NCBI GenBank assembly: GCA_002269645.1
Contig: NIVC01000513.1
Span: 248,001-312,000, forward strand
DNA: 64,000 nt
Source: Macrostomum lignano
Taxonomy: Eukaryota
Direction: 5' to 3'
This document shows, piece by piece, positions 6,968-53,132 of this stretch. The notes beneath the pieces were generated by a model. That model saw nothing but the letters and a program-made list of their open reading frames with translations. It did no database searches and was not told the DNA's origin. A program made the position numbers and the translations under genes. How positions within the stretch are numbered: the first letter of the stretch is position 1; each line of letters begins with the position of its first letter.

Positions 6968-7640
6968 TGAGAAGAATCTCAAGAAGAATTCCAGACAAGA
7001 ATCTCCAGAATTCCAGAGAAGAATCTCCAGGAGAATTCCAGAGAAGAATCTCCAGGAGAATTCCAGAGAAGAATCTCAAGAAGAATTCCAGACAAGAATC
7101 TCCAGAATTCCAGAGAAGAATCTCCAGGAGAATTCCAGAGGGGAATCTCAAGAAGAATTCCAGAGGGGAATCTCAAGAAGAATTCCAGAGGGGAATCTCA
7201 AGAAGAATTCCAGAGGGGAATCTCAAGAAGAATTCCAGAGGGGAATCTCAAGAAGAATTCCAGAGAAGAATCTCAAGGAGAATTCCAGAGGGGAATCTCA
7301 AGAAGAATTCCAGAGAAGAATCTCAAGGAGAATTCCAGAGAAGAATCTCAAGGAGAATTCCAGAGAAGAATCTCAAGAAGAATTCCAGAGAAGAATCTCA
7401 AGGAGAATTCCAGAGAAGAATCTCAAGGAGAATTCCAGAGAAGAATCTCAAGGAGAATTCCAGAGGGGAATCTCAAAAAGAATTCCAGAGGGGAATCTCA
7501 AGAAGAATTCCAGAGAAGAATCTCAAGGAGAATTCCAGAGAAGAATCTCAAGAAGAATTCCACAGAAGAATCTCCAGGAGAATTCCAGAGGGGAATCTCC
7601 AGGAGAATTCCAGAGGGGAATCTCAAGAATCTCAGGAATC
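6968..7640. repeat. 25-bp minisatellite GAATTCCAGAGGGGAATCTCAAGAA
   Basis: Paralogous to the 22-bp array at 27108. Confidence 0.95.
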
Positions 7641-8221
7641 TGAAGACAGTTAAAATTGAGCACCAACAAGGAAATGCCAATTAACTATTTTGAGACAATA
7701 ACACACGAGCGTGCTGCACAGAAGTGCAGGAAAAAACTGCAAAATCGAAAGTCAAATTCAAAAAGCCAATAAGAAAGTTAAACTCCATTTATTGAATTAA
7801 TTATTTGTAAATATATTTTCTCTGGAACGTTCGAAAAAAACGTAACCAAGCGTGTTCAGTATTGCATAGAGGCAGGTTGTAAGCGAGATTATAAAATATG
7901 CAATTTTAGGATTCGATTAAACAAATAACAAAAGAGCAATTTTCGAATTTTTGATTTATTAAATTTGGGTTATTATTATGCGATAGACAAAACGAATAAC
8001 GGTCGAATGAAAAAGGCTATTGCTAAATAAATTCTATGTAGCTACGAATATTCAACCATTATTGCCTATATGGTATGTGGTAATACTATTGAATATATCT
8101 CCTGAACAGAGATTAATAAATATTTATAAATATAAATATAAATCGTAACAATAAATCTGTCAGTTTCGCGAGTTGGACTGTGACAAAAAGTTTCAGAATG
8201 TCAAGCTTAACTGACCACAGT

Positions 8222-8254
8222 TCAAACTCCCATCACTTTGCGAGCGGCGAGGCC
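8222..8254 (-). CDS. Ferlin terminal coding exon ([10 protein letters not shown]), distal copy
   Basis: cag|GGCCTCGCC...GTTTGA; AATAAA on the minus strand at 7788-7793. Confidence 0.83.
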   Translation of the reverse strand, partial: GLAARKVMGV

Positions 8255-11200
8255 CTGCAATTTTATAAAAATAATTTTTCATAAATTTAAACAATAATGC
8301 TCTACTCTTACTCTTAGTAGCTGAAGTCTAGAAAACAAAATATAATAAACTAGAAGCAGTTTAAGCTTATGGAAATTCAGATTCCAGAATTTCCTGACAC
8401 TAAACTTGGCGCTTTCCTGAAACTAAATTTGATGCTTTTCCTGGCACTAAATTTGATACTTTTCCTGACACTAAACTTGACACTTTTCCTGGCACTAAAC
8501 TTGACGCTTTTTCTGACACTAAACTTGACACTTTTCCTGACACTAAATTTGACACTATTCCTGACACTAAATTTGACGCTTTTCCTGACACTAAACTTGA
8601 CACTTTTCCTGACACTAAATTTGACGCTTTTCCTGACACTAAATTTGACGCTTTTCCTGACACTAAACTTGACGCTTTTCCTGACACTAAACTTGACGCT
8701 TTTCCTGACACTAAATTTGACACCTTTCTGGCACTTGACACCAACTGACACTCTATTTCGGCAATTTGTGACACGGTTCACGACTGCCTAGAGCTCAATA
8801 TGCTACTATCTGACACTCAATATGCTACTATCTGACACTCAATATGCTACTATCTGACACTCAATATGCTACTATCTGACACTCAATATGCTACTATCTG
8901 ACACTCAATATGCTACTATCTGACACTCAATATGCTACTATCTGACACTCAATATGCTACTATCTGACACTCAATATGCTACTATCTGACACTCAATATG
9001 CTACTATCTAACACTCAATATGCTACTATCTGACACTCAATATGCTACTATCTGACACTCAATATGCTACTATCTGACACTCAATATGCTACTATCTGAC
9101 ACTCAATATGCTACTATCTGACACTCAATATACTACTATCTGACACTCAATATGCTACTATCTGACACTCAATATGCTACTATCTGACACTCAATATGCT
9201 ACTATCTGACACTCAATATGCTACTATCTGACACTCAATATGCTACTATCTGACACTCAATATGCTACTATCTGACACTCAATATGCTACTATCTGACAC
9301 TCAATATGCTACTATCTGACACTCAATATGCTACTATCTGACACTCAATATGCTACTATCTGACACTCAATATGCTACTATCTGACACTCAATATGCTAC
9401 TATCTGACACTCAATATGCTACTATCTAACACTCAATATGCTACTATCTGACACTCAATATGCTACTATCTGACACTCAATATACTACTATCTGACACTC
9501 AATATGCTACTATCTGACACTCAATATGCTACTATCTGACACTCAATATGCTACTATCTGACACTCAATATGCTACTATCTGACACTCAATATGCTACTA
9601 TCTGACACTCAATATGCTACTATCTGACACTCAATATGCTACTATCTGACACTCAATATGCTACTATCTGACACTCAATATGCTACTATCTGACACTCAA
9701 TATGCTACTATCTGACACTCAATATGCTACTATCTGACACTCAATATGCTACTATCTGACACTCAATATGCTACTATCTGACACTCAATATGCTACTATC
9801 TGACACTCAATATGCTACTATCTGACACTCAATATGCTACTATCTGACACTCAATCTGCTACTATCTGACACTCAATATGCTACTATCTGACACCCAATA
9901 TGCTACTATCTGACACTCGATATGCTACTATCTGACACTCAATATGCTACTATCTGACACTCAATATGCTACTATCTGACACTCAATCTGCTACTATCTG
10001 ACACTCAATATGCTACTATCTGACACCCAATATGCTACTATCTGACACTCGATATGCTACTATCTGACACTCAATATGCTACTATCTGACACTCAATATG
10101 CTACTATCTGACACTCAATATGCTACTATCTGACACTCAATATGCTACTATCTGACACTCAATATACTACTATCTGACACTCAATATGCTACTATCTGAC
10201 ACTCATGCGGCTTGAACTCACAGGCACAGCATAGATGAACATGGCCAGCAACAAGCCGAAAATGACCACCAGAAAGGCGCCGAGGATGTACCACTTGTAG
10301 TTCTTCCAAACGATGTGCTTGAAGGTCTTCCACGGAGACGTGAACCACAGGAAGGAGGTCTCCGGGCGCCTGGGTGAGGTGAAGGGTTTGCTGTGCAGAA
10401 ATACTGCCACGTGTGGAAGGTATGGGAAGGGATTGGGGAGATTTGAGAGACTTGAGGGATTGGGGAGATTTGAGAGACTCGAGGGATTGGGGAGATTTGA
10501 GAGATTTGAGGTATTGGGGAAATTTGAGATAGATTTGCGAATATTTAGGGAGAAACTACTTATTAGCATTGAGTCAGTAGTGCAAATGCGGCATGAATAC
10601 AGCAAGACAAAAAGACCCGCAGCTCACTTGGGCGGCTCCAGATGCGGGTTCTCGTTGGGCTCGTCTTGGCCGAAACCGGCGGGACGAAGCTGCGCCTCTT
10701 CGACCGTCAGCAGCTCCAGCTCCATCTCCACCTTGCCCTGCCGATGCGGGATTTCAGTATTGAGGTGTCGGGACCAACCAGCCTCTCAGCAAGGCTGCCC
10801 GATCTTCAACTTCTTCTTATTCAAATCGAACCTATCTTACTCCACCCAATCCAAACCCTACTTCTACCCAATCTCAACCCTACTTCTCACCCAATCTCAA
10901 CCTTACTTCTCACCCAATCTCAACCCTACTTCTCACCCAATCTCAATCCTACTTCTCACCCAATCTCAACCCTACGTTTCGACCTCTCCATTCCCACAGC
11001 TTCATGGATCTCACAGTGAGTCTCTCGCCATCGGGCTTCTCATCGTTGATACAGGGCCAGTAGCCGTAGGCGCGCTTGCAGTCGAACAGGTTGATCATCT
11101 TGACGCTCTTGCCGTAGGCGGGCAGCTGCTCAACTCCGCACTGTCGCGACTTCTTCTTCGGCGCCGGCATGCTGGACAAGTTGAGCTCCAAGGTGCCAAG

Positions 11201-14200
11201 GAAGTCGTCAGCCGAGAACTTGTCATTGTCCCAGATCTGCACGACCAGGTTCGGCGGGATGCACTGCTCAGTGGCGTCGAGAGACCAGAAGTGCTCCTTC
11301 TTCTTCACCACCATGACATTCTCGGCGGGCAGGTAGTCCATGGGGAATTTGAAGCGCCAGTTGAAGTTGCCGACCCCGTCGAGGCTGCGGTAGTGCACGT
11401 CTGTCTCCTGCTTCTCGTCAAGGCCCGCCAGCCAGCCCTGGGGGTGTAGAAGGGGATGTTGAGCTCTGATTACTAGGGAGATTACTGAAATGTCAGGGAT
11501 CGTAGGGGGGATTGCTGAGATGTCAAAGCTAATGGGGGAATTGCTGAGATGTCAAAGCTAATGGGGGAATTGCTGAGATGTCAAAGCTAATGGGGGAATT
11601 GCTGAGATGTCAAAGCTAATGGGGGAATTGCTGAGATGTCAAAGCTAATGGGGGAATTGCTGAGATGTCAAAGCTAATGGGGGGAATTGCTGAGATGTCA
11701 AGGCTCATAGAGGGAATTGCTGAGACGCTACGAATCATGGGGGAATTGCGGAGATGCTGATTGTAGGCAGCGCCTACTATCGTGTGTGTGTTGGGGGGTT
11801 GTTAGCGGCTGCGCCGCGTGACTCTGCTAGCTCAACCCTTATGCGTACAATATCAAATGTGCATGGTGCGACTTTAGCCACCATTCTGACTCAGCTCAAT
11901 AATTCAATAAATATACTGATCGCTATTATTCTCGCCTGCAAGCTTTCGGCAACTATCGACTACAACAAGCAGTCTAGCCTCGTTTCACTCACTACACTGA
12001 TGATCATGAGGGAATTCCGGAGATGCTAAGGATCATGTGGGGAATTGCTGAGATGCTAAGGATCATGGGGGGAATTGCTGAGATGCTAAGGATCATGGGG
12101 GGAATTGCTGAGATGCTAAGGATCATGTGGGGAATTGCTGAGATGCTAAGGATCATGGGGGGAATTGCTGAGATGCTAAGGATCATGGGGGGAATTGCTG
12201 AGATGCTAAGGATCATGGGGGGAATTGCTGAGATGTCAAAACTAATGGGGGGAATTGCTGAGATGCTAAGGATCATGGGGGGAATTGCTGAGATGCTAAG
12301 GATCATGGGGGGAATTGCTGAGATGTCAAAACTAATGGGGGGAATTGCTGAGATGTCAAAGCTAATGGGGGGAATTGCTGAGATGCTAAGGATCATGGGG
12401 GGAATTGCTGAGATGTCAAAGCTAATGGGGGGAATTGCTGAGATGCTAAGGATCATGGGGGGAATTGCTGAGATGTCAAAACTAATGGGGGGAATTGCTG
12501 AGATGTCAAAGCTAATGGGGGGAATTGCTGAGATGCTAAGGATCATGGGGGGAATTGCTGAGATGCTAAGGATCATGGGGGGAATTGCTGAGATCGATGT
12601 AACCACGCTATGGTCGCGGGATAGGGCAGGGGAACTTTTTCGAGAAGTGCCGCCCATCACCGCGCACCTCCTGCACTCTTCGACCAGGCCTGCAGACTCC
12701 CGCTCTGCTGCACCTCCTGCTGTCTTGGCTCCGTCTCCCCTGCCGCCACACTTGCCTTTCCGGGGCTCCCTGTCCCCCTCTGTACCTCCCCCTCTACCCT
12801 ATCTCCTCTGTGCTCCACCCTATTCTCTCTGTACCTCCACTGTCTCCCCTCTTTTTGCCCATTTTTGCACTATTTTCCTGCGCTGTCCCCTCTTTTTCTG
12901 CGTCTACTTACAGTATTTTGCGCGCTCACCGTGCCCCCATCCCTTCTCAAACTCCCAAACGGTGATGCAAGTCGTGTGACCCCTCCTTCCCCTCGGTGAC
13001 TCATCGATGACTCATCCCCCTCTCTTGCGCAACCTTTTCTCATGTCATTGTTCTCCCCCCCCCAAATTTCTCATGTGACACCCACCCCACCTCCGCTTCT
13101 ATTGTTCTCGTTTTTGATTCTTTTGTTCTCTTTACCCCCACCAATTATCACATTTTCTCTGATTTTCTCTTACTATTGTTCTCGCTTTCGCACCTAATTA
13201 TCACCTTTTCCCCAATGTTTGCCTTTCTATTGTTCTCGATTCTCCCCAATTATCCCCGATTTCCAATTCCTTTGTTCTCAATGTTTGCTCGCGCAACACT
13301 TTCACGACCTCCCGCGGCGCCAATTACCCCCACCCCACCTCTGGATTGCGCAATTCTCCCATTTCTCATGTTGCTATGCCGTTCTCATGCTTCTCATCAT
13401 GACTCATTCTGACGTCATTCTGCTGGCAACCAATCAGAGAGAGGGAGTCATGGAAACGACCTTGGAGCGGCGGCTGAGAAGGCTATTTAAGGAAGCGGTT
13501 TTCGGCGTGAGAATCCTCAACCTTCGGGCTCCTCATCTTTCTTTAGACTTGCTGTCAGACATTGTTCTGACCCAATCGTCTATAGGACGAACCTCTGCCG
13601 GTCTGCGGTCTGATACCGCCAAGTTACCTTAGCTCCCCAAGTGAGCTCGCCTATCGGCCCGCGGTCTGTTACCGCCGAGTATCATCAGCATCGCCTGATC
13701 TACATCAGTGCCTCGTCGCTTCAGCGCATCGCCGCTTCACCGTCTGCCTGACTGCAGCCAGCAGCCGCCCTCGTCACTCCATTGCTCTTGATCTCTGTGC
13801 AGCCGCCGGTAAGTTCCTGTTACTAATTTGTGCTCTGATTGCCTTTGCTTATCCGGGGTTTACCTATTTTCCATTGCTTGATTAGAGAGCTGAGCCAATT
13901 GTGATACCGTATCTTTTGCTGTACTTTTACTCAATAGTGAAGCCGCTTAATAGCCTGATTATTTGCCTAAGGGCCTAATTATTAACTATTAACTAACCTC
14001 ATCATTATTCAATCTTTCACCATCATTTCACTCATGGCGTCACACACCATCAGCCTCTTGTAGCCGCTCCTCCCGAGCAAGAATTGAATCGTCGCCCTGT
14101 TCGTGCGAATCGAGGAGTTGCACCACGTCGATTCGGAGACCCAATCCTCTATTAATCTGTACCAATCTGTCTATCAATCGCTCTGGAATGTTTAATTCTC

Positions 14201-17200
14201 ACCCTTCTCATCGCGCCTCCAAGTTGCTAAGTACAGTACGGGTTCGTATTTTCATACAGTTGTAATTGTATTTTCATGCGTCTAGCAAGTTCCATAAAGG
14301 TGGCCTTCCGTCGGCGCTCACTACTACTTCACCCCGACAAGGTAGGCGTCGGAGGCACGGGGGCCTACCAGCGGGTGGTGTTCGCGTATTCAGTCCTGGG
14401 CGACCCGTTTTATAGAGCGCTATACGACAAATTCGGTGAAGCAGCCCTGAGCAACACGCTATCGTACGCGCAGTTCTTCAGCCCGCCACCCGGAGTCAGT
14501 TTTCCGGACGAAATACGAGCCGGACTCGAAAGTATGGGGATCGTGGTCATCAGTGACGATGAAGACGAACCTCCCGCCGTTGATGCGACCCCAATTGCGC
14601 CGGCGGGTGGAGTCTTAATGGTCGCGCGACCAAGTCCACCAAGAGTCCCTGAATCGATTGAGGCCAGGTACAGAAGTCTCCGGAATCACCTGGCCCAGCA
14701 TCTGCGGATCAGTCGGATCGCTCAGGCGCAAGAATGTATCTCTGGACTGGAAGAACTGTTCCTTTCGGCAGGCCTGGAACCTCGGCGATGGGTCTCCGAT
14801 TCTCTAGGGGTTGCGCTGAGTTTCATAGCGTCTGATGTGTCACCTTGAAAACGCCGCCCAGGGTCATCTAGGCGAGGCATTCGAGTGCTGTCGAACGAAG
14901 CGCTGACTGCATCAATCGGATTTGTAATGACATGCATCAAGAAAATGGGCCTGCTGAACGGCGGGGCACTCCTGTCAAAACTCCGAGAGCTAACGGTACT
15001 CGTGGCCCCGGACTCGAAGTCCGAAGACCAGGCAGAGAAGGCCGTCGATGAAGCGGATATCCTCGACCTAGAATGCCCTCAAGAAGACCTAGATGCCGTC
15101 GGTCCCGAGGAGCGCCCAGCTAGTCCAAGCGCCCCAGAAGCGAGCCAGGTCACGGGACTATTAGACGCGCATGCCTTCTTGCTCCGGCTATTTTCATGGT
15201 CAGGGGATCTGTTCCTGGACGGTGTAGAAGCCTGTGTGTCGGTAGTGAATTCACCATTCTATTTGAGACCGTCAAACCCCGCAACTGCCCGGCTCATCTG
15301 TGACTCTCGGATCCACTTTGCGCTCGGATTGAGGGCGTCAGCGGCACCGCTCATGACGACGCTGGCCGCCGACCTACAGCGTTTCATAGCGGGTGAATGG
15401 CCAAGGGTAGTGGCTGTCGGCGAAGCCGAGTTGGACGTCCAGAATACTGCGATCAGTGTGGAGCAACAAATGGCAGCCCTGGAGCTACAGGTTCGGCTAG
15501 CCAAGAAACGGGATCTACCCCTCCTGGTTCGTTTGCGAGAGCGTAGACGTAGTCCAGTCGAACCCGGTGGCTCGGCCTGGCACCAGTTCTTACGGTTGCT
15601 AGTGGCGTCGGACTTTGCAAACTGTCGCATTCTAGTTGTCGAATCTTCCGACTGGCCCAAAGACACTCTCAGCCTGTACCTAGCGTCGTTGCCAAGACTG
15701 AAATTTGAAGTCACCGCCCGGGTCGTCAACAGCCGATGGCATGCCCAACGCGTCGCAGCGATACCTTCCGACCGGCTGCTAGTCGCTTCGTCAGCGCCAT
15801 TCGCGGGAAACCCGGGCAAGCCGACTGATGTCCGGAAGGCGGCGGCCTGGCTTGCTGAGGAGCGAAGCGACGGGGCTCTACCTGGTCGACTGGCTGGGCT
15901 GCGCGTGAATTTTATAATATTTAACTGTGTGTAAAATGCCAGCTGACAATAACAAATGCTCATGTCGTCATTGCACAGTCCTTCGTCTATGGTATGAACC
16001 CTCTTTTCGTGGAGGGGGAGGGTGTTGTGCCCGGGTGCGCTTGCACCGATGAGCAATCTCTGGCTCTCGGTCAAGTGCGCCCGGCACTGCACTCCCACCC
16101 CTCCTGGCCGCGTGCCTGCGCCACCCCCCCATTCTGTTTGTGTCAGCCCCCCCACCCATTTCTGCCTGCGCTAACCCCCCCCCCCCAGTTGTGTATCAGC
16201 TCTTATGCTCTGCCCCCTTTTCTTTATGCGTACCCAGCCGGATTGGCTGGTCTGGCCCTCTCTCCCCCCTTTTGTTAGCCCTTGTCAATTGGTGATTGGC
16301 CAATAAGTTGGGTTTTGATAATGCTGTCTGGCGTGAGACCCTAGGGCTTACGCCAGGCAGTCCAAATAAATAGAGAATTGCTGGCGGTGGGCAGGGCGAG
16401 CGCGCTTGTTGACGCCTGACACTAGACTACTCTTCAGAACCTACAAACTTCAACAGCAAGAATCTCAGTTCTACAAATTGACGAATTCGCTGCCTTGCCC
16501 ATCGTCGAGCAGATTGGAAATCAAAGTAAGACCTACGCCTACATTCATTACTCATTTGGGCCTCGTGCGAAGCGGGTACTGTACACCTCAGGGACGGACT
16601 GACTACCTTACCTCGACGCGACCCCACGCTCAGTTACGGAGTCAGTCCGGTCAGTGGGCTGACGCCATCTCCAGGCTCGATCACTGCAGAGCGTTCTTAG
16701 GGGGCTGTTTCGATCACGTGTAGTGACACAACACTTGCTAAGCCTTTCTCCCGGGGTGGCAAAGCATAAGAAGTTTGGGTAAGCTAATGGCCTCTCCCCG
16801 TGCAAAGCCCGCCTGTGTGTGTGTGTGCTGCGGGTCCGTGTGTGCGTGCAGTAGAGGGATTAGCGAGTCTTGGCACAGAATGGCAGCAGGAAGGTTGCAA
16901 CCCCATGCTGACGCGTCCCTTCGCCCTGAGCAATCTAAACCATAGACAGCACATGTTCGCCTCATACTACTCTTAGTAATCAAGGTCGTAAGTCAGCCTC
17001 GCTCACAGCCACAAAGGATCCCCTGCTGAGAAATCCTCCAGATTGAGCTCAGAGTTCCCGATCATGCCCCAAGCAGAGTCCCTGTACTCGGCTGCATGTG
17101 TCTCCCCTGTTAGCCTAAATCCCCTGGTAACCAATCCAGGCGGGGCTCTAGCCTCGAGAGGTCTGTAAGATCCAGGTGCGCCAGGTCACATAGAGTGGTG

Positions 17201-25865: not shown

Positions 25866-25884
25866 CTGGAGGTGAAGCATGGGT

Positions 25885-26120: not shown

Positions 26121-26201
26121 TAAAAAAAGCCCCTTTGTTTGGTCAATGCAAAACATATTCAATCGGAAACCGCTCAAAATCAATTGATCCGCATTTAAAT
26201 G

Positions 26202-26511: not shown

Positions 26512-26629
26512 AAATGTCACACCTGTTACATTTGGTGTCATTAGCGGTGGGATTTGATATCCAAGCCGTCATGTTTTAAAATCATTCCGACCGTTTACAA
26601 TAAAAGAGAGAGGAAATCGATAGCTTAAA

Positions 26630-28681: not shown

Positions 28682-28714
28682 TCAAACTCCCATCACTTTG
28701 CGAGCAGCGAGACC
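28682..28714 (-). CDS. Ferlin terminal coding exon ([10 protein letters not shown]), proximal copy
   Basis: cag|GGTCTCGCT...GTTTGA; AATAAA on the minus strand at 28239-28244. Confidence 0.85.
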   Translation of the reverse strand, partial: GLAARKVMGV

Positions 28715-37700: not shown

Positions 37701-40700
37701 TATATTTTTGTAGTTATTTTAAAAGTTTCTAATAATTATTTAAGCTGATAAAAAGGAAGAAGTGCAAGGAAAATTTTATTGAAATCTACGTGTACTAATA
37801 GAGGAAAAAAGCAAAACTATGAGTAGCTAAAACAGTAGAGATAGATACTGAGCAAGGAAATATATAATTAAAATACATTTTACCTAAGAATAAACTATAT
37901 AAAATGTATTTATGTCAGAGTTTGGCTCATCAGTTCTTTTTAGGTTTCTTGGCGGCTTCTTGGCGGCCGGATTTAGCCGGCGACGGTCGCTTTCTCTGCT
38001 CGCGTGAAGAACCTGCTGACGGTTGCTGTTCTTGCGGACTACCTCGAAATATTTCCGGGAAATTCTTCTCGGCTCTTTCTGGTAAAGATTTGTTGAGAAA
38101 TATTTTGTTCTTATCGTGCGTCGGTCCGTACTCGTGCGTGCGTCGGTAAATCTCCATGCACACGTAGGTGCTGCCGTCCCTCAGTTGCACAGGTCTGAGA
38201 AGCATCCGGTAACTTCTGCTTAGATTTACAGAATAGTAGTCCTGATCCCCACAGGGAACCAGATTCAGATTCAGTGTGTCTTGTAGTTTTGCCATTATTT
38301 CAGCAAAGTGAGCACTTGGCTCCTGCGCATAAATATAGTTAACGATTTCATCTACAGTGACTTGCGTAGTATGGGTGCCCCCGAATGGTGGGTCTCGCCA
38401 ACCCTGGTCTTTTATAAATCCACACCGCATTTTGAGTCGGTGTCGCACCTGTCAGTGAATAGCAAAGTAGGACTGAGTCAGACTCATGGCGTACTAGCAA
38501 TCAATGCCCTCCTTTCTTGGAGGCAACACAAAATCGACAATTTTTTTAATTAACTACATGTAGCTTCTGGCCTTGTACAGTCGCTATAGCTAGTAATTAC
38601 AATGGGGGTCGCCATGGTAAACCCGAAAAAATTACAGCTCCGAAAGCACTTCCTATCATAAATCCGAAATATCATAAACCCGAAATATCATAAACCCGAA
38701 ATATCATAACTCTGAAATTACTAGCAGGGCCCATCATAAATCCGAAATATCATAAACCCGAAATATCATAAACACGAAATATCATAAACACGAAATATCA
38801 TAACTCCGAAATATCATAAATCCGAAATATCATAAACCCGAAATATCATAAACACGAAATATCATAACTCCGAAAACCAAAATAGTGTTGGACATGGCTA
38901 GAACTTTTGGAGTTATGATATTTCGGAGTTATGACATTTCGCAGTTATGATGGCAATTCCCCATAAGTCTTGATATCTCAGCATTTTTCCAAATGAACCT
39001 TTAAATCATAGCAATTAATCACTGGAAAATTTCTGATCAAACGGTGCAAGTTTCGTGATAATCTTTTTTATGACATCAATCCCATAAATACCCACGAGTA
39101 CCTACCTATAGAGACAAACCATTTTAGTATAGTGAATAATGTCTTCATCCTTGTCCTTGCATCTCATACCCGCTTTCAATATTCCTCAATATACTCTTAA
39201 AGTGTTTTACACCACGAATTCTCATACCTAACTATGCTCAGTGGTCAGTATGGTGTATAAGAAATGCACAGCAAAAAATGTATTCAATTAATGCTAATCT
39301 CTACATATAAAAATAAAAACTCTTCTATATGCAAGGGTTCGGCAAACTCATGTGCCCGCGAAGCCTCTCTATCCGCCGTATCCGCCCCTCGGGTCTTTTG
39401 AAACTTCACAATAGCAATCTTCTCAGCTCTCAGCTCTCTTCTCTCTTTGAGGCAGCGCTGAGCCTCGCACATCGCTTACTCTGGTTGACTGCACTGTCAA
39501 TGACTGTACGCTTGTTACGAATCATCAACACTTAGCCTTATTCTCGCACCAATACTCGCGCACCAGCGCTTATTGACTTTCGTATCGTCAATTGCTCAAA
39601 ATAGACTTTGTGTGCGCAACAACAATGTACAGTTTAAAAAAAAACCATGAACTAAGCGTATTGTCGAACATAAAAGATTGATTGAGGAATCGCTAAAATA
39701 TTAAGACTCAATGGGAAATATCTGGGATATCAAGGTTCAGGGGGGGATGTCTATACTAGTGTGACTCTTAGGGAGAATTGCGTCAAGGCTTACGGGGGGA
39801 TTGCTGAGATGTCAAGGCTAACGGGGGGATTGCTGAGATGTCAAGGCTAACGGGGGATTGCTGAGATGTCAAGGCTAACGGGGGATTGCTGAGATGTCAA
39901 GGCTAACGGGGAGATTGCTGAGATGTCAAGGCTAACGGGGGGATTGCTGAGATGTCAAGGCTCACGGGGGGATTGCTGAGATGTCAAGGATTACGGGGGG
40001 ATTGCTGAGATGGCAAGGATTACGGGGGGATTGCTGAGATGTCAAGGCTAACGGGGGGATTGCTGAGATGTCAAGGCTCACGGGGGGATTGCTGAGATGT
40101 CAAGGCTTACGGGGGGATTGCTGAGATGTCAAGGCTAACGGGGAATTGCTGAGATGTCAAGGATTACGGGGGGATTGCTGAGATGTCAAGGCTAACGGGG
40201 GATTGCTGAGATGTCAAGGATTACGGGGGATTGCTGAGATGTCAAGGCTAACGGGGGGATTGTTGAGATGTCAAGGCTAACGGGGGATTGCTGAGATGTC
40301 AAGGCTAACGGGGGATTGCTGAGATGTCAAGGCTAACGGGGGATTGCTGAGATGTCAAGGCTAACGGGGGATTGCTGAGATGTCAAGGCTTACGGGGGGA
40401 TTGCTGAGATGTCAAGGCTCACGGGGGGATTGCTGAGATGTCAAGGATTACGGGGGATTGCTGAGATGTCAAGGCTAACGGGGGATTGCTGAGATGTCAA
40501 GGATTACGGGGGGATTGCTGAGATGTCAAGGCTAACGGGGGGATTGTTGAGATGTCAAGGCTAACGGGGGGATTGCTGAGATGTCAAGGCTAACGGGGGG
40601 ATTGCTGAGATGTCAAGGCTAACGGGGGGATTGCTGAGATGTCAAGGCTAACGGGGGGATTGCTGAGATGTCAAGGCTTACGGGGGGATTGTTGAGATGT

Positions 40701-43700
40701 CAAGGCTGGGTTGCTGAGATGTCAAAGCTCACGTGGGATGCTGATATCTGAGGCAAGGTAGCTGGATTCAGGACTGACGCATTTTGCTTTGAACTTCATA
40801 ATACTAGCGATAGCGACTGCACAAGATCAAAAGCTACATGTAGTTTATTATCAAGCACTTTAGTTCCTTTTCTGTTGCCTCCCAAACGGGATGGGGCGCT
40901 GATTGGTAGTAACAACCTAATAACTTAATTAGAATAATACTCATACAATTACAGTACTTTATGATGCAGTTGCTTTGTTTTTAGATTATATTAATTAATT
41001 TAGTAATTCGATACATTAGAAAATATTGAATAAATGATTTACTTACCCTAACGGTGTGTGTGTCCGTTGATGTTGCAGAAGAATGAAGAAGCAAAAATCT
41101 CTTCTGCAGGTAGGGCTTAATAGAAAGGCTGCTAGTTAAAGTATCAAACTAGAAAAGAATGTCTCAAAGCTCTATTTCGCTCAAAAATCTTTATGAATGA
41201 CTGAGACGACCTCTGCTTCTGCATTCCGCTCATTGGCTCCCATGGAAACCGCCTAGAACTTGAAGGGTATGGGAAAGTCTAACCATTGCACAGGCCAGGG
41301 ACTCCTAAAAATAGCATCACTAGAGATCTCTGGAAGTCCCTGCCCCGGCTCTGTTCGCGGGCACACGGATTTCGCTAAAATAATTTACATTAAGGACCAC
41401 CCAAAAGCCATTTTTCTTGTCTGGTTCAGAAGGCCAATGATAGAAGTCTGCCGCATCTAATTAAATCCCATCTAAAGAATGTACATGGGATTTTATTCAA
41501 CGCTATCAAGCTTGTTCCCAACAACAAGACATAAAATTAATATAAATGTACACTGAATACTTTCTGACGATTGAATACTGCTTGAAGTTGACTGCTGTAA
41601 ACTTTGCTGTCACTGTGACGAATGTCTCTCACTCACAGTCACAACATCAGTTTGGAAACCAGCATTTTTCATTTCAATAAATAGGCCATGCACAAAAACA
41701 TGACAACAAAGGCTAACAACGAGTTAACAAACATGCGATAAAAAGAAATCTGCTATATGAATTACAGGTCGATCGTTGGCAGGTGTGGCAGACAGACTCA
41801 TTGCGGAGCCTTCGGCAAGGTTCGAAGCAGAGTCTGCGACTTGCTGGGTTGTCAAGAAATGCTAAACTATAAGATTGGTTATTCGTTTCCAATGCGAAAG
41901 CTTGCACGGCAGTATATAATTATTGTTCATTCTTGTATCTAAGCACAAATTTTTATCACATTCAACTAGATGCTCCTAATCACATCTAGACAACGTGAAC
42001 ACATCTAGACACACCTGGACAATCTAGACACACTTGGACATTTTCTAGACACACTTGGACATTATCTAGACACACTTGGACATTTTCTAGACACACTTGG
42101 ACATTTTCTAGACACACTTGGACATTATCTAGACACACTTGGACATTTTCTAGACACACTTGGACATTTTCTAGACACACTTGGACATTATCTAGACATA
42201 CCTGGGCACATTTAGACACACCTTGGATACACCTAGGCACACTTGGACACATCTATACATACCTGAACACAGCTAGACACACCTGGTCAGTGTAGTCACA
42301 TCTATACACACCTGGACACATCTAGACATACCTAGACACATCTAGACACACCTGGACAGATCTGGACACATCCAGATACAAATGGATACAACTAGACACA
42401 CCTTGGATACACCTAGGCACACCTGGACACAGCCAGACACACCTGGACACAGCCAGACACACCTGGACGCAGCTAGACACACCTGGGCACAGCCAGACAC
42501 AATTGGACACAGCCAGACACACCTGGACACAGCCAGACACACCTGGGCACAGCCAGACACACCTGGACACAGCCAGACACACCTGGGCACAGCCAGACAC
42601 ACTTGGACACAGATATACACAGCTAACTACACCCAAACGGATGTAGGCTCATGAATACTAGCAAATCCTGAAAATACAAGACAAAAAATTGGTTGAATTT
42701 TTAACAGACACAGCAGCAAGCAGTGAGCACACCAACTCCTACCTTCATCCGCATGTTCAGCACTGCTGTGTTGCCCCTAGGAGCAGAGCCGACTGGTCGC
42801 TGAGCAGAATGGGCGTTTAATAGAGCTGGAAAAGCGAAAATGGAAAAAAGGGGGTTACTCACTAGAATACTGGATGGGGCGTCACTGAAGGGGGTCAGCG
42901 GTCCCCCAAAAACGCTGAAGAGGGTCAGCGGCCTCCAAAAACACTGAAGGGGGTCAGCGGCCTCCAAAAACACGGAAGGGGTCAGCGGCCTCCAAAAACA
43001 CTGAAGGGGGTCAGCGGCCTCCAAAAACACTGAAGAGGGTCAGCGGCCTCCAAAAACACTGAAGGGGTCAGCGGCCTCCAAAAACACTGAAGGGGTCAGC
43101 GGCCTCCAAAAACACTGAAGGGGTCAGCGGCCTCCAAAAACACTGAAGGGGGTCAGCGGCCCCATAAAACACTGAAAGGGGTCAGCGGCCTCCAAAAACA
43201 CTGAAGGGGGTCAGCGGCCCCATAAAACACTGAAGGGGGTCAGCGGCCTCCAAAAACACTGAAGGGGGTCAGCGGCCCCATAAAACACTGAAGGGGGTCA
43301 GCGGCCTCTAAAAACACTGAAGAGGGTCAGCGGCCCCATAAAACACTGAAGGGGGTCAGCGGACTCCAAAAACACTGAAAGGGGTCAGCGGACTCCAAAA
43401 ACACTGAAAGGGGTCAGCGGACTCCAAAAACACTGAAGAGGGTCAGAGCCCCCCCCCCTCCCCAGAAACAGCTTACCTGGGAAGTTGGCAAACGCGTCGT
43501 ACTCCTCGTTAATCGGCTCAGTGCGGTAATCGTCCAAGCACTTGATCACGTGCAGCCCGACCATGGGCTTGCGTCCGAACTGGCGATGGTCCCGAATCCG
43601 GATGTTCATGGGCGGCAAATACAGCGTCTCCTTCGGCAGCATGACGTCCATGAACAGCAGAGTCTCTTGGAAGTTCGGATTTCTCTTAGTGTTGGCGATG

Positions 43701-46700
43701 ATGTCCGTGGTTGCCAAGTGGCCGCCAATCTCGAACTCGACGCTGGGAGAAGTGACGGACATCAGCTGGAAGGCCTGCATGTTGCGCACGCCCCAGGACA
43801 GGATCTCGATGCCCGTCCGTTGCAGCACTGGCTTCACGCCGTCTGGCACAACGAAAATGTCGGCGCCCCGTTTTGAAGGCGTCGGCGGCAGCGGCTCACC
43901 GGTGAGTAGGAAGAGCTCGAATGCCGCCAGCAGCTCGCCGCCCTCCTTGCTGCCTGGAGGTGAAGCATGGGTTGTACACCTGGTCTACTGGTACACCTGG
44001 TCAGCTGGTACACCTGGTTTACTGGTACACCTGGCCTACTGTTTACTGGTACACCTGGCCTACTGTTTACTGGTACACCTGCTCAGCTGGTACACCTGGT
44101 CAACTGGTACACCTGGTCAACTGGTACATCTGGTCAGCTGGTACATCTGGTCTACTGGTACACCTGGTCTAATGGTATACCTTGGTCTAATGGTACACCT
44201 GGTCCAATGGTACACCTGGTCCAATGGTACACCTGGTCCAATGGTACACCTGGTCTAATGGTACACCTGGTCCAATGGTACACCTGGTCTACTTAAAAAA
44301 AGCCCCTTTGTTTGGTCAATGCAAAACATAATCAATCGGAAACCACTCAAAATCAATTGATCCGCATTTAAATGAACAAAAAAGCAGAGTCGCAAATTTC
44401 ATTCCAACGCACCCTTAGTGATGGAGTGCCACTGCAGCACAGGCCTGCGCTTTTCCGTAGGGCTCAGCTTCACCATGGGCTGCACAACGGCCCGGCCAAG
44501 GAACTCGTCCTCGCCCAGCTGATCGTAGTCGAAAATCTCCACCACAACCGGGGGCGGATTGTCAGCCAGACTCTTCGGATCGCTGAACGCTTCGACGCTG
44601 TCAAAGATGAGAGTCTGGTCCCAGGTGGGGCACAGGGTCTTGTCAATCCGCTCGGTGACCCCCGACCGGGTGTGGAAGATCACCCTGGCGTAGGGGTCGG
44701 ACAGACCCGTCTGATCGCCGGCAAGCAGGTCGCGGGCCTGGAACACGTAGGCTCGGAGCTGCCAGCGGCGCGGCTCTGCGGAGGCATGGGCCGGGTTTGA
44801 CGGATGGAAGGTCCCGGGTTCGATTCACTTAGGGAATGGACAGTACGTGGGAGTCAGGGAACGGGTAATTAGTAAGTCATGAGTTCGATTCTGTCTAGGG
44901 AACAGGTAGAAGTGGAAGGTCCAGGGTTCGAGTCCGGCTAGGGAACGGATGGAAAGTCCCGGGTTCGAGTCCGGCTAAGGAACGGATGGAAGGTCCCGGG
45001 TTCGAGTCAGGCTAGGGAACGGATGGAAGGTCCAGGGTTCGAGTCTGGCTAGGGAACGGATGAAAGGTCCAGGGTTCGAGTCAGGCTAGGGAACGGATGG
45101 AAGGTCCAGGGTTCGAGTCTGGCTAGGGAACGGATGAAAGGTCCAGGGTTCGAGTCTGGCTAGGTAACGGATGGAAGGTCCAGGGTTCGAGTCCGGCTAG
45201 GGAACGGATGGAAAGTCCCGGGTTCGAGTCCGGCTAAGGAACGGATGGAAGGTCCAGGGTTCGAGTCCGGCTAGGTAACGGATGGAAGGTCCCGGGTTCG
45301 AGTCCGGCTAGGGAACGGTGGGAAGGTCTTAGGCATTACAGTAAGCATCAACTTATTAAAGCCTATAAAAAATGAAAACTCTGTCTGTCTGTTGTCTGTC
45401 TTTGTACAAATTACTTCACAATGGACTCTTAAACCGCTTAACCAAATGACACCAAATCAGGGAGTCGGGACTATGATGTAAACTTAAGCTCATAAGGTGG
45501 AGTCCTTAATTGTCCCTTTGCTTGTTCTCTCCCATCCCAGGTCCAATTTTTGTAATTTTTTTTGCTAAAACAGCTTTCTGGTGTCACTGTGAGCAGAATG
45601 ACGCATCAGTTGTGTACATAGGTTACCCGGGCTTCACTTTACGAGCTCAAGTTGACAGGCCCTTTTCGAGTCTCAAAGTTAATCCTAAACGGCGCTGTGC
45701 ACTTTTAAAGTTAGTCTCTTTTTTTCAACGAGGAAACCACATCCAACCTCCGCTTGCCAAAAGGTCAAATAGTCAAATAGGTCAAATAGGCCTACAATTG
45801 ACCAACTTTCGGCTGCCATACTAATAAGTTTGCTCCACGTGAAGCGATTGACTTTAAACTTGACACAATTCTTCATTGGCTCATTCTCTGCCTAAATGTA
45901 AATTCTCAATACTGTAGCTCAATCAGAACGGAAACTGTAAGTATGTGAAGTCTGTCTGCTTTTTCTGGTGTTTGTGCCGCTCACTCACTCATTCCTCCCC
46001 GCCCAGACCAAGGGTCAGGGGATAGGGGCTCAGTGTACATTAGCAATGTACATTACCTCAAGCAGTCAATTGGGCCCGATAAAGAATCCACTGCGGGCCA
46101 GAAGAGAGTGGTCAGGAGAGAGAACAGACGATTAGAAAAGAGAGGAGAAGTGAGTGAGAGTATGAGAGAAAAGATAGAAGATAAGAGGAGAGAAGAGGGG
46201 CGAGAGGAGGGGGAGAGAGGGGAGAGAAGAAATAGAGAAGAGACAAGAGAGGAGAGAGACAAAGAGAGACAAGGGGAAAGACAAGGCTTAGTTTAGGTGA
46301 AACTAAGCAACCGTACGGTCAGGGGATCCGCAGACCGAGTACCGAGTCCCACAACCCCTGGCCTTAACAATCATCAAACTCGATCACAACCTCCTCCGTC
46401 CGCCCGCAGTATAGTGTGCTCAGGGAGGGTCGCCATCAGAAACCCGAAATATCACAAACCCGAAATATCACAAACCCGAAATAGCACAAACCCGAAATAT
46501 CACAAACCCGAAATATCATAAACTCAAAATATCAGAAACCCGAAATATCACAAACCCGAAATATCACAAACCCGAAATATCAGAAACCCGAAATATCACA
46601 AACCCGAAATATCAGAAACCCGAAATATCATAAACCCGAAATATCACAAACCCGAAATATCGCAAACCCGAAATATCACAAACCCGAAATATCGCAAACC

Positions 46701-53097: not shown

Positions 53098-53132
<35 letters not shown>

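What the first reader, a model, noticed from the sequence alone, without database searches (positions are those of the whole stretch)
6968..44375. Tandem duplication of the entire ferlin 3' half, with both copies intact: possible mutually exclusive C-terminal halves
Seen: homology runs from the GAATTCC/GAGTTCC minisatellite (6968 / 27108) to gcatttaaatga (26202 / 44375), which is 38 nt inside the intron after the last single-copy exon. All 8 exons, their phases, stops and polyA signals are kept in both copies, and visible exon differences are mostly synonymous. The phase-1 donor at 44413 is compatible with either acceptor (43953 or 25865). Inference: alternative 3' halves with different 3' UTRs, or a headless paralog. 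An uncollapsed haplotype in the assembly is the main alternative. The much lower 3' UTR similarity, the 25- vs 22-bp repeat units, the unique junction and the third copy argue against a simple artefact but do not exclude it.
Basis: partly seen in the sequence, partly recalled or inferred. Interest (0 to 1): 0.7.

Follow-up and report, generated by a model that had tools for sequence, protein, structure and literature searches.

The report
Tandem-duplicated ferlin gene tail in flatworm
In the flatworm Macrostomum lignano the last eight exons of a ferlin (membrane-fusion/repair) gene lie twice in a row, and selection has kept both copies intact, so the second, promoter-less copy is probably used, but how it gets into a messenger RNA is not yet known.

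Summary
The window is part of contig NIVC01000513.1 of the Macrostomum lignano DV1 assembly Mlig_3_7. On the minus strand it carries a dysferlin/myoferlin-type ferlin. Its last 8 exons (801 codons: C2E, C2F, C2G, membrane anchor) occur twice in tandem, at 44375→27108 and 26202→6969, with 0.9 kb of unrelated DNA between.

All 16 exons keep length, phase, GT/AG, the TGA stop and one shared AATAAA. The coding sequences differ at 43 sites: 40 synonymous, 3 not (omega 0.02).

Divergence is a mosaic. It is 0-2% at the 5' end and 14-25% in introns 5-7, the 3'UTR and the core of intron 2. Subgenomes of this inbred neopolyploid differ by about 2%. An uncollapsed haplotype or homeolog join is therefore unlikely (~0.12) but cannot be excluded without reads. 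The pattern fits an old duplication with gene conversion and purifying selection on both copies.

The RNA-based GenBank annotation places an 88-aa fragment across distal intron 4, a hint of expression.

In this spliced-leader trans-splicing species, an operon-like short ferlin is at least as likely.

Caveat: the single-copy head has an apparent 1-nt frameshift at ~50587.

The parts
44413..44775 (-). Last single-copy ferlin exon (C2D domain). It ends in phase 1 at 44413 with donor AAGG|GTGCGT.
   Evidence: Pfam C2 E 2.3e-16. Splice sites read. It is part of the 13-exon model that gives exactly the annotated 1184 aa.
44376..44412 (-). The 37 nt of the intron that are not duplicated. The upstream breakpoint of the duplication lies at 44375/44376.
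   Evidence: Base-by-base reading of both copies.
27108..44375 (-). Proximal copy of the duplicated unit: most of intron 0, exons X1-X8, introns, 3'UTR and terminal 22-bp minisatellite.
   Evidence: Self-BLAST chain; TRF.
43477..43953 (-). Proximal X1 (477 nt; last strand of C2D plus C2E).
   Evidence: tblastn to ferlin homologues.
42743..42825 (-). Proximal X2 (83 nt; linker; phase 1 in, phase 0 out).
   Evidence: Found as the only copy-conserved AG..GT exon with the right phases. Confirmed by the exact 1184-aa length match.
36173..36663 (-). Proximal X3 (491 nt; DWWSKYY motif, start of C2F).
33902..34541 (-). Proximal X4 (640 nt; C2F end, dsrm_Ferlin, start of C2G).
   Evidence: Pfam dsrm_Ferlin E 7e-27.
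31351..31773 (-). Proximal X5 (423 nt; C2G).
30840..30949 (-). Proximal X6 (110 nt).
30346..30493 (-). Proximal X7 (148 nt; transmembrane anchor).
   Evidence: Ferlin_C.
28682..28714 (-). Proximal X8 (33 nt; [10 protein letters not shown] then TGA). The annotated 1184-aa CDS ends here.
28220..28681 (-). Proximal 3'UTR, with AATAAA at 28647 (private) and 28244 (shared).
27108..28186 (.). 22-bp-unit minisatellite (49 copies) at the 3' edge of the proximal unit.
   Evidence: TRF.
26203..27107 (.). Junction: 0.9 kb with no counterpart anywhere else in the window. It contains one chance-level ATG..GTGAG phase-1 candidate first exon at 26918-26870.
6969..26202 (-). Distal copy of the duplicated unit.
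25389..25865 (-). Distal X1. Its acceptor cttcacCTCCAG| fits the M. lignano trans-splice motif [T/C]TNCAG.
   Evidence: motif from PMC8629364.
24111..24193 (-). Distal X2.
18625..19115 (-). Distal X3.
17655..18294 (-). Distal X4. Its last 171 nt are part of an annotated 88-aa product.
11015..11437 (-). Distal X5. Its first 93 nt are part of the annotated 88-aa product.
10628..10737 (-). Distal X6.
10222..10369 (-). Distal X7 (transmembrane anchor).
8222..8254 (-). Distal X8 with the TGA stop.
7770..8221 (-). Distal 3'UTR, with AATAAA at 7960 (private) and 7793 (shared).
6969..7629 (.). 25-bp-unit minisatellite (26.7 copies) at the 3' edge of the distal unit.
   Evidence: TRF.
1879..6965 (-). 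Partial third unit, colinear with the inside of intron 2: 20-bp-minisatellite remnant 6885-6965, element 6633-6960 and ORF3 (1949-2407). It holds no ferlin exons.
37930..38430 (-). Orphan ORF nested in proximal intron 2 (ORFp). It lies in the old, unconverted core of the unit.
20736..21185 (-). Orphan ORF nested in distal intron 2 (ORFd). It is annotated as a 149-aa protein in the GenBank record.
12595..17522 (.). 4.9 kb present only in distal intron 4.

Best explanation
SHOWN from the sequence:
- The unit is a genuine-looking direct tandem duplication of the 3' 40% of a dysferlin/myoferlin-type ferlin gene in Macrostomum lignano. It covers 8 exons and 801 codons (C2E, C2F with the ferlin dsRBD-like insert, C2G and the membrane anchor), plus introns, 3'UTR and a terminal minisatellite.
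- Both copies are intact.
- Coding differences are almost all synonymous.
- Divergence is a mosaic.

INFERRED about its history:
- The duplication is old. Unconverted parts differ by about 0.2-0.3 substitutions per site, roughly ten times the subgenome divergence of this neopolyploid.
- The 5' two thirds have since been homogenised by gene conversion.
- Both coding sequences have stayed under strong purifying selection. The promoter-less distal copy must therefore be translated, or have been until very recently.

INFERRED, and the weakest step, how the distal copy is expressed:
- Transcription reads through the proximal poly(A) sites into the distal copy.
- By then the shared donor at 44413 has normally been spliced to the proximal acceptor 459 nt downstream, and proximal exon 8 has no donor. 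The distal exon-1 acceptor (25865) is thus an orphan 3' splice site.
- In this species such sites receive the spliced leader. The result would be an independent, operon-like mRNA for a short tail-anchored ferlin: C2F-C2G-TM for certain, and C2E whole or in part depending on the start codon.
- A fraction of transcripts may instead join distal exons in cis, either 44413>25865 or a proximal exon n to distal exon n+1. That would give the same full-length protein with a different 3'UTR.
For: Structure and intactness.

Ferlin identity:
- Pfam C2, dsrm_Ferlin, Ferlin_C and FerB.
- The distal 801 aa align to human dysferlin residues 1306-2075, E 8e-275.

Selection:
- Nei-Gojobori counts: Sd 40, Nd 3, dS 0.077, dN 0.0016, omega 0.021.
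- If the distal lineage were neutral, about 68 nonsynonymous changes are expected and 3 are seen (P 1e-25).
- In the oldest part alone (exons 7-8, pS 0.19-0.24), 13 are expected and 0 seen (P 2e-6).
- The 3 replacements lie at positions that vary among ferlins, judged from the homologue alignments and my knowledge of dysferlin.

Age and gene conversion:
- pS per exon is 0.018 / 0 / 0.076 / 0.088 / 0.082 / 0 / 0.188 / 0.240. The heterogeneity is significant (Fisher P 1e-4).
- Unique intron sequence is 98-100% identical at the 5' end. Introns 5-7 and the 3'UTR are 80-86% identical with many indels.
- Intron 2 switches sharply from about 99% to 60-80% and back.
- The ORF nested in that core has dS 0.29 between the copies.

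Against an artefact:
- There is no N, and the unit lies inside one Canu PacBio contig (PMC5730564).
- The line is inbred and the subgenomes differ by 1.4-2.4% SNPs, 1.1% in CDS (PMC10733133).
- The sequences that follow the two copies are unrelated.
- A third, older partial unit follows.

Expression:
- The GenBank annotation of this assembly is built from RNA-seq (PMC5730564).
- It contains an 88-aa internal ferlin-frame product that joins distal X4 to distal X5 across the distal-specific 6.2-kb intron and carries the distal Q522.
- It also contains the distal nested ORF.

Spliced-leader route:
- 30-39% of genes are trans-spliced and 15% lie in operons. The rule is that an acceptor without an upstream donor is trans-spliced (PMC8629364; PMC5730564).
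- The distal acceptor CTCCAG fits [T/C]TNCAG.
- The repeat-adjusted distance from the proximal poly(A) site is about 1.0 kb.
- The first 173 nt of X1 hold no ATG. After the spliced leader's own AUG, the next AUG is the in-frame Met59.
Against: - No read-level evidence could be consulted, neither DNA depth nor RNA junctions.
- CDS divergence overall (1.8%) is close to the homeolog CDS average (1.1%). Mlig_3_7 is known to hold mis-represented paralogs.
- With the canonical acceptor, the spliced leader's terminal AUG is out of frame (a 40-codon uORF). The first in-frame Met would remove the first strands of C2E. An in-frame leader AUG needs a weak AAG| acceptor 8 nt downstream.
- The repeat-adjusted intergenic distance (1040 nt) sits at the edge of the 1-kb operon criterion.
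- The RNA-based annotation holds no full distal gene model, only a 264-nt island. Distal expression may therefore be low, or the island may come from reads of an unassembled homeolog.
- Exons 1-2 were homogenised too recently to say whether they are under selection in the distal copy.
Confidence: 0.4

Rival explanations
1. The two 8-exon tails are alternative 3' cassettes of one gene. The donor at 44413 is spliced either to 43953 or, after read-through of the proximal poly(A) sites, to 25865. Alternatively a proximal exon n joins distal exon n+1. The product is the same full-length ferlin (3 residue differences) with a different 3'UTR. This resembles the IgM/IgD constant-region choice.
For: - Phase-compatible donor and acceptors with identical splice signals.
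- Each cassette has its own stop and poly(A) signals, and the 3'UTRs are strongly diverged (80% plus indels). The proximal one has a private AATAAA 35 nt after the stop.
- Purifying selection acts on the whole distal coding sequence.
- Nearly the whole upstream intron, with acceptor context, was duplicated.
- It yields a structurally complete protein, whereas a headless product would start inside C2D/C2E.
Against: - The proximal acceptor is identical in sequence, is transcribed 18.5 kb earlier and lies only 459 nt from the donor.
- The unique intron-0 sequence is 98% identical between copies, so there is little on which regulation could act.
- No docking/selector complementarity above shuffled controls: -65.6 against -63.4 +/- 4.8 kcal/mol.
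- The annotation shows no isoform reaching distal X1-X3.
- In this species an orphan acceptor is expected to take the spliced leader.
- The head has an apparent frameshift at ~50587 in this assembly.
Confidence: 0.28
2. Assembly artefact. The two copies are homeologous (subgenome) or residual allelic versions of one single-copy tail, or of two dispersed loci. The assembler joined them head to tail in the neopolyploid DV1 genome.
For: - Mlig_3_7 is about 764 Mb for a ~500 Mb genome. About 70% of it is in 3-copy blocks, and some paralogs are known to be mis-represented (PMC10733133; PMC5730564).
- CDS divergence of 1.8% is of the order of homeolog CDS divergence (1.1%).
- An excess of synonymous differences is also what two functional homeologs would show.
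- Homeologs differ by many large indels.
Against: - There is no gap, and the unit lies inside a long-read contig.
- Aligned non-coding divergence of 14-25% in the 3' third and the intron-2 core, and dS 0.29 in the nested ORF, compare with about 2% between subgenomes.
- The sequence after the proximal copy (26203-27107) is unrelated to the sequence after the distal copy. Alleles or homeologs should match there.
- The join lies in unique sequence, not in a long shared repeat.
- A third partial unit follows in the same contig.
- The 0.9-kb junction plus the 1.1-kb minisatellite is short enough for PacBio reads to span (inference).
Confidence: 0.12
3. Headless paralog with a new promoter and first exon of its own, in the 0.9-kb junction or the proximal 3' flank, making a short ferlin without trans-splicing.
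For: - The junction is unique sequence of unknown origin.
- It holds one ATG-initiated 49-nt candidate exon (26918-26870) that ends in phase 1 at a GTGAG donor.
- Short ferlin forms are known in mammals (the otoferlin short isoform and calpain-made mini-dysferlin C72; from my own knowledge).
Against: - A single such candidate in 2.3 kb is what chance gives.
- No gene model is annotated there.
- No promoter evidence is available.
Confidence: 0.1
4. The distal copy is a dead, untranslated partial duplicate that only looks intact because gene conversion from the functional proximal copy keeps repairing it.
For: Clear signs of conversion at the 5' end: exons 1-2 and 1.3 kb of intron 2 are 99-100% identical, next to segments at 60-80%.
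Against: - Conversion erases synonymous and nonsynonymous differences alike. It cannot produce 40 synonymous against 3 nonsynonymous differences.
- In exons 3-8 the copies have accumulated pS 0.08-0.24 since any conversion, with 2 replacements where about 50 (exons 3-5) plus 13 (exons 7-8) are expected for a neutral copy.
- All 16 splice sites, the stop and a poly(A) signal are kept although introns and UTR have diverged by up to 20%.
Confidence: 0.05

Closest known systems
Mutually exclusive exon clusters born by tandem exon duplication (e.g. Dscam, tropomyosin; own knowledge)
   Same: The alternatives are tandem, homologous, of equal length and equal phase, and sit behind one shared donor.
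   Different: - The unit is eight exons plus stop, 3'UTR and poly(A) signal, not a single internal exon.
- The alternatives encode almost the same peptide (3/801 differences).
- No competing RNA pairing was found.
- Exclusivity would come from termination, not from splicing rules.
Alternative multi-exon 3' cassettes chosen by poly(A) read-through: immunoglobulin heavy-chain C-mu/C-delta, Drosophila lola and mod(mdg4) (own knowledge)
   Same: A shared 5' part and tandemly arranged homologous 3' exon sets, each with its own stop and poly(A) site. The distal set can be reached only if the proximal poly(A) site is ignored.
   Different: In those loci the cassettes encode clearly different C-termini. 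Here the proteins are near identical and only the 3'UTRs differ. Use of the distal set is not demonstrated.
Spliced-leader-resolved operons of Macrostomum lignano (PMC8629364, PMC5730564)
   Same: Two same-strand coding units. The downstream unit starts at a [T/C]TNCAG acceptor with no donor upstream of it in the processed transcript. The spacer is repeat-rich.
   Different: - The downstream 'gene' is a copy of the tail of the upstream gene and starts in the middle of a domain.
- The repeat-adjusted spacer (about 1.0 kb) is at the limit of the published criterion.
- The spliced leader's AUG is out of frame at the canonical acceptor.
- No leader-bearing reads were examined.
Partial (3'-only) gene duplicates, usually pseudogenes (e.g. 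surveys in C. elegans by Katju and Lynch; own knowledge)
   Same: A duplicate that lacks promoter and 5' exons, lying in tandem next to its parent.
   Different: Such copies normally decay. This one shows omega 0.02 and fully conserved splice, stop and poly(A) signals over dS up to 0.2.
Short ferlin forms: otoferlin short isoform, calpain-released mini-dysferlin C72 (own knowledge); solved full-length dysferlin/myoferlin structures 9b8k, 9h6x
   Same: The duplicated unit equals dysferlin residues ~1306-2075. It therefore contains the C2F-C2G-TM module that works on its own in mammals.
   Different: The mammalian short forms come from an internal promoter or from proteolysis of one gene, not from a duplicated gene tail.
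False duplications / chimeric paralog joins in polyploid assemblies (PMC10733133)
   Same: Same assembly, known redundancy, and CDS divergence of similar size.
   Different: - Local non-coding and nested-ORF divergence is about ten times the subgenome level.
- The downstream flanks are unrelated.
- There is no gap and no long shared repeat at the join.

Membership tests
Ferlin family (type I, dysferlin/myoferlin-like) | Several C2 domains along the protein | tested here: met
   Pfam C2 in exons at 61.5 kb and 44.4-44.8 kb and in X1, X3-X5.
Ferlin family (type I, dysferlin/myoferlin-like) | Ferlin-specific modules (FerB, dsrm_Ferlin, Ferlin_C) | tested here: met
   FerB E 1e-21 at 52822-53073. 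dsrm_Ferlin E 2e-26 and Ferlin_C E 5e-27 in the distal tail.
Ferlin family (type I, dysferlin/myoferlin-like) | C-terminal single transmembrane anchor | tested here: met
   Hydrophobic stretch [21 protein letters not shown] in X7 of both copies, inside the Ferlin_C match.
Ferlin family (type I, dysferlin/myoferlin-like) | DysF domain between FerB and C2D | tested here: inconclusive
   GWKW / ERDWFV and GWEY motifs in exons at 49.9-50.8 kb. The annotated product has only a weak Pex24p/DysF-type hit. The best solved relative is dysferlin. The exon carries an apparent frameshift.
Mutually exclusive exon cluster | Tandem homologous alternatives of equal length and phase | tested here: met
   8 against 8 exons of identical lengths and phases.
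Mutually exclusive exon cluster | Alternatives encode different peptide segments | tested here: not met
   3 differences in 801 residues.
Mutually exclusive exon cluster | A mechanism that enforces one-of-n choice (competing RNA pairing, steric or spliceosome incompatibility) | tested here: not met
   Duplex search of the donor region against the sequences upstream of either acceptor was not better than shuffles. Exclusivity could come only from the terminal exon and poly(A) site.
Mutually exclusive exon cluster | Mature mRNAs contain exactly one alternative, and both are used | not testable with these tools
   Needs RNA-seq junction reads or long-read cDNA.
Alternative 3' cassette by poly(A) read-through | Each cassette has its own stop codon and poly(A) signal | tested here: met
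   TGA at 28682-28684 and 8222-8224. AATAAA at 28647/28244 and at 7960/7793.
Alternative 3' cassette by poly(A) read-through | Transcripts read through the proximal poly(A) site and splice to the distal cassette | not testable with these tools
   Only indirect evidence: RNA-based annotation fragments on the distal copy.
M. lignano SL operon (criteria of PMC8629364) | Same-strand neighbours with repeat-adjusted spacer below 1 kb | tested here: inconclusive
   2354 nt raw and 1040 nt after removing TRF arrays.
M. lignano SL operon (criteria of PMC8629364) | Downstream unit starts at a trans-splice acceptor ([T/C]TNCAG) | tested here: met
   cacCTCCAG|GC at 25865; motif.
M. lignano SL operon (criteria of PMC8629364) | Spliced-leader-containing reads at that acceptor | not testable with these tools
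Uncollapsed haplotype / homeolog misjoin | Divergence at haplotype or subgenome level throughout (about 2% SNPs or less) | tested here: not met
   Introns 5-7 and the 3'UTR are 80-86% identical, the intron-2 core 60-80%, and the nested ORF has dS 0.29. Subgenomes differ by 1.4-2.4%. The 5' third and the CDS average do fall in the subgenome range.
Uncollapsed haplotype / homeolog misjoin | Gap, scaffold join or long shared repeat at the junction; flanks of the two copies match each other | tested here: not met
   No N. The junction is unique and unrelated to the distal flank.
Uncollapsed haplotype / homeolog misjoin | Half read depth on each copy and no spanning reads | not testable with these tools
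   Needs SRX1063031 PacBio reads and Illumina reads mapped to NIVC01000513.1.
Processed (retro) pseudogene | Loss of introns and a poly(A) tract | tested here: not met
   All 7 introns are retained at the same positions.

The most novel reading that the evidence does not exclude
A promoter-less, eight-exon copy of a ferlin tail has been kept as a working coding unit for a long time. It is expressed from read-through transcripts, because in a spliced-leader trans-splicing animal any orphan acceptor is automatically given a cap (and, in flatworms, possibly an AUG). If so, partial 3' gene duplicates can be 'born functional' in such genomes. The animal would then make a natural stand-alone C2(E)F-C2G-TM mini-ferlin beside the full-length protein. 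Alternatively, it would have an IgM/IgD-like pair of alternative 3' cassettes that differ only in their 3'UTRs.
Probability: 0.3. Interest if true: 0.65.

Novelty: new variant of a known kind. Interest (0 to 1): 0.42.

Why it matters
Partial duplicates that lack a promoter and 5' exons are normally dead on arrival. Here one has kept every splice site, its stop, a poly(A) signal and an almost unchanged 801-residue reading frame while neighbouring non-coding DNA diverged by up to 20-25%.

If the arrangement is confirmed at read level, it is a clean natural case for two questions:
- How does a headless gene tail get expressed (poly(A) read-through with cis-splicing, or spliced-leader trans-splicing)?
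- Does the C-terminal ferlin module have a function of its own? That question also matters for mini-dysferlin and mini-otoferlin designs.

M. lignano has public RNA-seq, poly(A)-end and spliced-leader read data, as well as RNAi and transgenesis. The question is therefore directly testable.

The case is also a useful check on false versus true duplications in a notoriously redundant neopolyploid assembly.

It is not a new kind of system. Tandem segmental duplication, concerted evolution and alternative 3' ends are all known.

Tried and rejected
- Exons E2/E3 sought in 99%-identical intronic blocks (22289-22777, 20127-20443). These are non-coding in all frames. The real exon 2 is the 83-nt exon at 42825-42743 / 24193-24111.
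- Read-through of exon 7 as the terminal exon (…[12 protein letters not shown]). Rejected in favour of a 33-nt exon 8 encoding [10 protein letters not shown], which resembles ferlin C-termini. The 1184-aa length match supports this.
- Docking/selector RNA pairing between the shared donor region and the sequence upstream of either acceptor: no signal above shuffles.
- Homology between the junction (26203-27107) and the distal flank or any other part of the window: none.
- Remnants of ferlin exons in the third unit (1-6968): none by tblastn or blastn.
- Close relatives or transcripts of this ferlin in the protein collections: the best are 56-64% identical proteins of other phyla. No M. lignano homeolog proteins were returned, so homeologous contigs could not be fetched.
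- Relatives of the nested ORF: only itself in 1.84 billion representatives and in the 5.8-billion-cluster search. No Pfam hit. The fold search gave only weak HigB/RelE-like hits.
- Terminal repeats around the 4.9-kb distal-specific insert: none.
- Literature on ferlin tail duplication, or on trans-splicing rescuing partial duplicates: nothing relevant found.

Full report
WHAT THE WINDOW IS

The minus strand carries a ferlin gene whose 5' end lies towards 64000.
- Pfam finds C2 domains, FerB, the ferlin dsRBD-like domain and Ferlin_C.
- The C-terminal 801 residues align to human dysferlin 1306-2075 with E 8e-275.
- The best named protein relatives are only 56-64% identical (oyster, sea urchin, flatworms).

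The source turned up by accident. A small ORF nested in an intron has a single match among 1.84 billion representative proteins, and that match is itself. It is encoded on NCBI GCA_002269645.1, contig NIVC01000513.1, 558 kb. This is the Mlig_3_7 assembly of Macrostomum lignano line DV1.

Two facts about this organism shape everything that follows.
- It is a highly inbred neopolyploid with three subgenomes that differ by about 1.4-2.4% SNPs (1.1% in CDS). Its assembly is redundant and partly mis-represents paralogs (PMC10733133).
- It trans-splices a 35-nt spliced leader ending in ATG onto 30-39% of its genes and has operons (PMC8629364; PMC5730564).

CHECK OF THE OBSERVATION

Self-BLAST shows a colinear, same-strand chain between 6974-26206 and 27100-44378, interrupted only by minisatellites.

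Read base by base, the homology begins at 44375/26202. That is 37-38 nt into the intron that follows the single-copy exon ending at 44413, whose donor is AAGG|GTGCGT in phase 1. It ends in a minisatellite with 22-bp units (27108-28186) in one copy and 25-bp units (6969-7629) in the other. Between the copies lie 0.9 kb (26203-27107) that match nothing else in the window.

I rebuilt the exons from homologue alignments, copy-to-copy conservation and splice phases. Each copy has eight exons of 477, 83, 491, 640, 423, 110, 148 and 33 nt, all with AG and GT[AG]AG-type sites. Each ends in [13 protein letters not shown].

Five upstream exons, starting at an ATG at 50760, join the proximal eight to give exactly 1184 residues. 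That is the length of the RNA-based product annotated at this place, whose CDS ends at the proximal stop.

One AATAAA is homologous in both 3'UTRs (28244/7793), and each copy has a private one (28647; 7960).

One limitation applies. The 'third copy' (1879-6965) repeats only the inside of intron 2: a minisatellite remnant, a 330-bp element and the nested ORF. It contains no ferlin exon.

SELECTION

The two coding sequences differ at 43 of 2406 positions. Forty differences are synonymous and three are replacements (N178T, D239G, P522Q), all at positions that vary among ferlins. Nei-Gojobori gives dS 0.077, dN 0.0016 and omega 0.021.

If the promoter-less distal copy had drifted neutrally, about 68 replacements would be expected (P about 1e-25). 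In exons 7-8 alone, 13 are expected and none is seen (P 2e-6).

Gene conversion cannot produce this pattern, because it removes both classes of difference. So there are two possibilities. Either both copies are translated and constrained, or they are two versions of one functional gene that the assembler placed side by side.

REAL OR ARTEFACT

Divergence along the unit is a mosaic.
- Synonymous divergence per exon runs 0.018, 0, 0.076, 0.088, 0.082, 0, 0.188, 0.240. The heterogeneity is significant.
- Unique intronic sequence is 98-100% identical at the 5' end. Introns 5-7 and the 3'UTR are only 80-86% identical, with many indels.
- Intron 2 switches abruptly from about 99% to 60-80% and back to 94-100%.
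- The ORF nested in that divergent core differs by dS 0.29 between the copies and by about 0.7 from the third copy.

Values of 14-29% are an order of magnitude above the subgenome divergence of this inbred line.

Further points speak against an artefact.
- The window has no gap and lies inside a Canu long-read contig.
- The join is in unique sequence.
- The DNA following the proximal copy is unrelated to the DNA following the distal copy. Alleles or homeologs should match there.

The pattern is what old tandem paralogs with patchy gene conversion look like.

I cannot see reads, and the average CDS divergence (1.8%) is not far from the homeolog average. I therefore leave about 0.12 for a mis-join.

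IS THE DISTAL COPY EXPRESSED?

The GenBank annotation of this assembly derives from RNA-seq assemblies cut at trans-splice and poly(A) sites. Within the 20 kb I could retrieve, it contains three products:
- the 1184-aa ferlin product ending at the proximal stop;
- the distal nested ORF (149 aa);
- an 88-aa internal ORF.

The 88-aa ORF is the last 57 codons of distal exon 4 joined to the first 31 codons of distal exon 5, across the distal-specific 6.2-kb intron. It carries the distal Q522. This stretch holds the densest cluster of copy-specific SNPs, so it looks like an island of uniquely mappable reads.

It is a hint that distal-type mRNA exists, not a proof. There is no full distal model.

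HOW THE DISTAL COPY COULD BE USED

The donor at 44413 fits both acceptors. Any proximal exon n could also join distal exon n+1. The product would be the same full-length protein with another 3'UTR. Against it:
- the proximal acceptor is identical, is transcribed 18.5 kb earlier and lies 459 nt from the donor;
- there is no competing RNA pairing;
- the two 'halves' differ by three residues, so nothing at protein level is alternative.

Trans model. After proximal exon 8, which has no donor, the distal exon-1 acceptor is an orphan 3' splice site. In this species such sites take the spliced leader.
- The acceptor CTCCAG fits the published motif.
- The repeat-adjusted spacer is about 1.0 kb, at the edge of the operon criterion.
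- The leader's AUG is out of frame at this acceptor (a 40-codon uORF). The next AUG is the in-frame Met59, and no other ATG occurs in the first 173 nt.
- An AG 8 nt downstream would put the leader AUG in frame.
- Flatworm leader AUGs are out of frame in most recipient mRNAs and are used as initiators in some (PMC9851317).
- The product would be a short, tail-anchored ferlin containing at least C2F-C2G-TM. From my own knowledge, that module works on its own in mammals (mini-dysferlin C72, the short otoferlin isoform).

I rank the options as follows: trans/operon-like route 0.40, cis route 0.28, a private promoter 0.10, artefact 0.12 and a dead copy 0.05. The first two are not exclusive, and the choice between them is inference only.

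CAVEAT ON THE HEAD

In the single-copy DysF exon the ferlin frame breaks at a GG run (about 50586-50588). Upstream the frame reads …LTPPAGWKW and downstream [10 protein letters not shown]…. One additional G would give the canonical GWKWERDWFV. This explains why the annotated product starts at ATG 50760 in the shifted frame.

It is either a residual indel of the long-read assembly or a real lesion in this subgenome's copy. If it is real, no full-length ferlin can be made from this locus, and the cis model loses its head.

COMPARISON AND VERDICT

The locus resembles four known things:
- mutually exclusive exon clusters in its origin;
- IgM/IgD-type or lola-type alternative 3' cassettes in its layout;
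- M. lignano operons in its likely processing;
- ordinary partial duplicates in its birth.

It fails the tested defining features of a classical mutually exclusive cluster (different peptides, an enforcing mechanism) and of a haplotype or homeolog artefact (uniform low divergence, matching flanks, a gap).

It is a new variant of known kinds: a headless multi-exon gene tail held under strong purifying selection and in concerted evolution with its parent. Interest is moderate. The case is testable at once with public reads, in a model with RNAi and transgenesis.

Noticed in passing
window 37930-38430 (-), 20736-21185 (-), 1949-2407 (-): An orphan ORF family of about 150-165 aa, nested on the same strand in ferlin intron 2 of both copies and present once more downstream.
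- The copies are 45-55% identical in protein, with omega 0.7-1.2, yet all three are open.
- There is no Pfam hit and no relative in 1.84 billion representatives except the distal copy itself, which GenBank annotates from RNA evidence.
- All three share a conserved ~60 nt upstream with an acceptor-like CACTGACAG|GTGCGAC 18 nt before the ATG.
- The AlphaFold model (pLDDT 66) has a beta-alpha-alpha-beta4-alpha topology, with only weak Foldseek hits to HigB/YoeB/RelE toxins (E ~0.02).

   Followed up: partly
window ~50586-50588 (-), exon 50458-50760 and upstream: An apparent 1-nt frameshift at a GG run in the single-copy DysF exon of the ferlin head (…GWKW | ERDWFV…). The annotated 1184-aa product therefore starts at ATG 50760 in the shifted frame. 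It may be an assembly indel or a real lesion of this subgenome copy.
   Followed up: partly
window 12595-17522; ORF 14231-15931 (+): 4.9 kb present only in distal intron 4. On the opposite strand it carries a 567-codon reading frame with a DnaJ domain followed by a TatD-DNase-like domain, interrupted by a single TGA at 14846-14848. It has no terminal repeats and is not annotated in the record.
   Followed up: partly
window 238-1079 (+) and 1514-1768 (-): Transposon-like ORFs just beyond the third partial unit. One is a GIY-YIG-type ORF (Pfam E 1.7e-4, just under the cut-off; possibly Penelope-like). The others look by eye like the C-terminal part of a tyrosine recombinase, but have no Pfam hit.
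   Followed up: partly
window 6633-6960, 22495-22818, 41729-42053: A 330-bp element that always follows the 20-bp intron-2 minisatellite. It is 99% identical between the two ferlin copies and 87-89% identical to the third copy. All unit boundaries of the second and third units fall in minisatellites, which suggests that these arrays are the breakage or recombination sites.
   Followed up: partly
whole window, e.g. 2576-3563, 8794-10205, 32011-33877, 34568-36107, 53041-56068, 56565-58609: Nearly every intron is filled with minisatellites of 15-37-bp units, up to 3 kb long. Between the two ferlin copies they keep their position but differ in copy number and sometimes in unit length. One 29/30-bp family occurs in proximal intron 2, proximal intron 4 and distal intron 4.
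   Followed up: no
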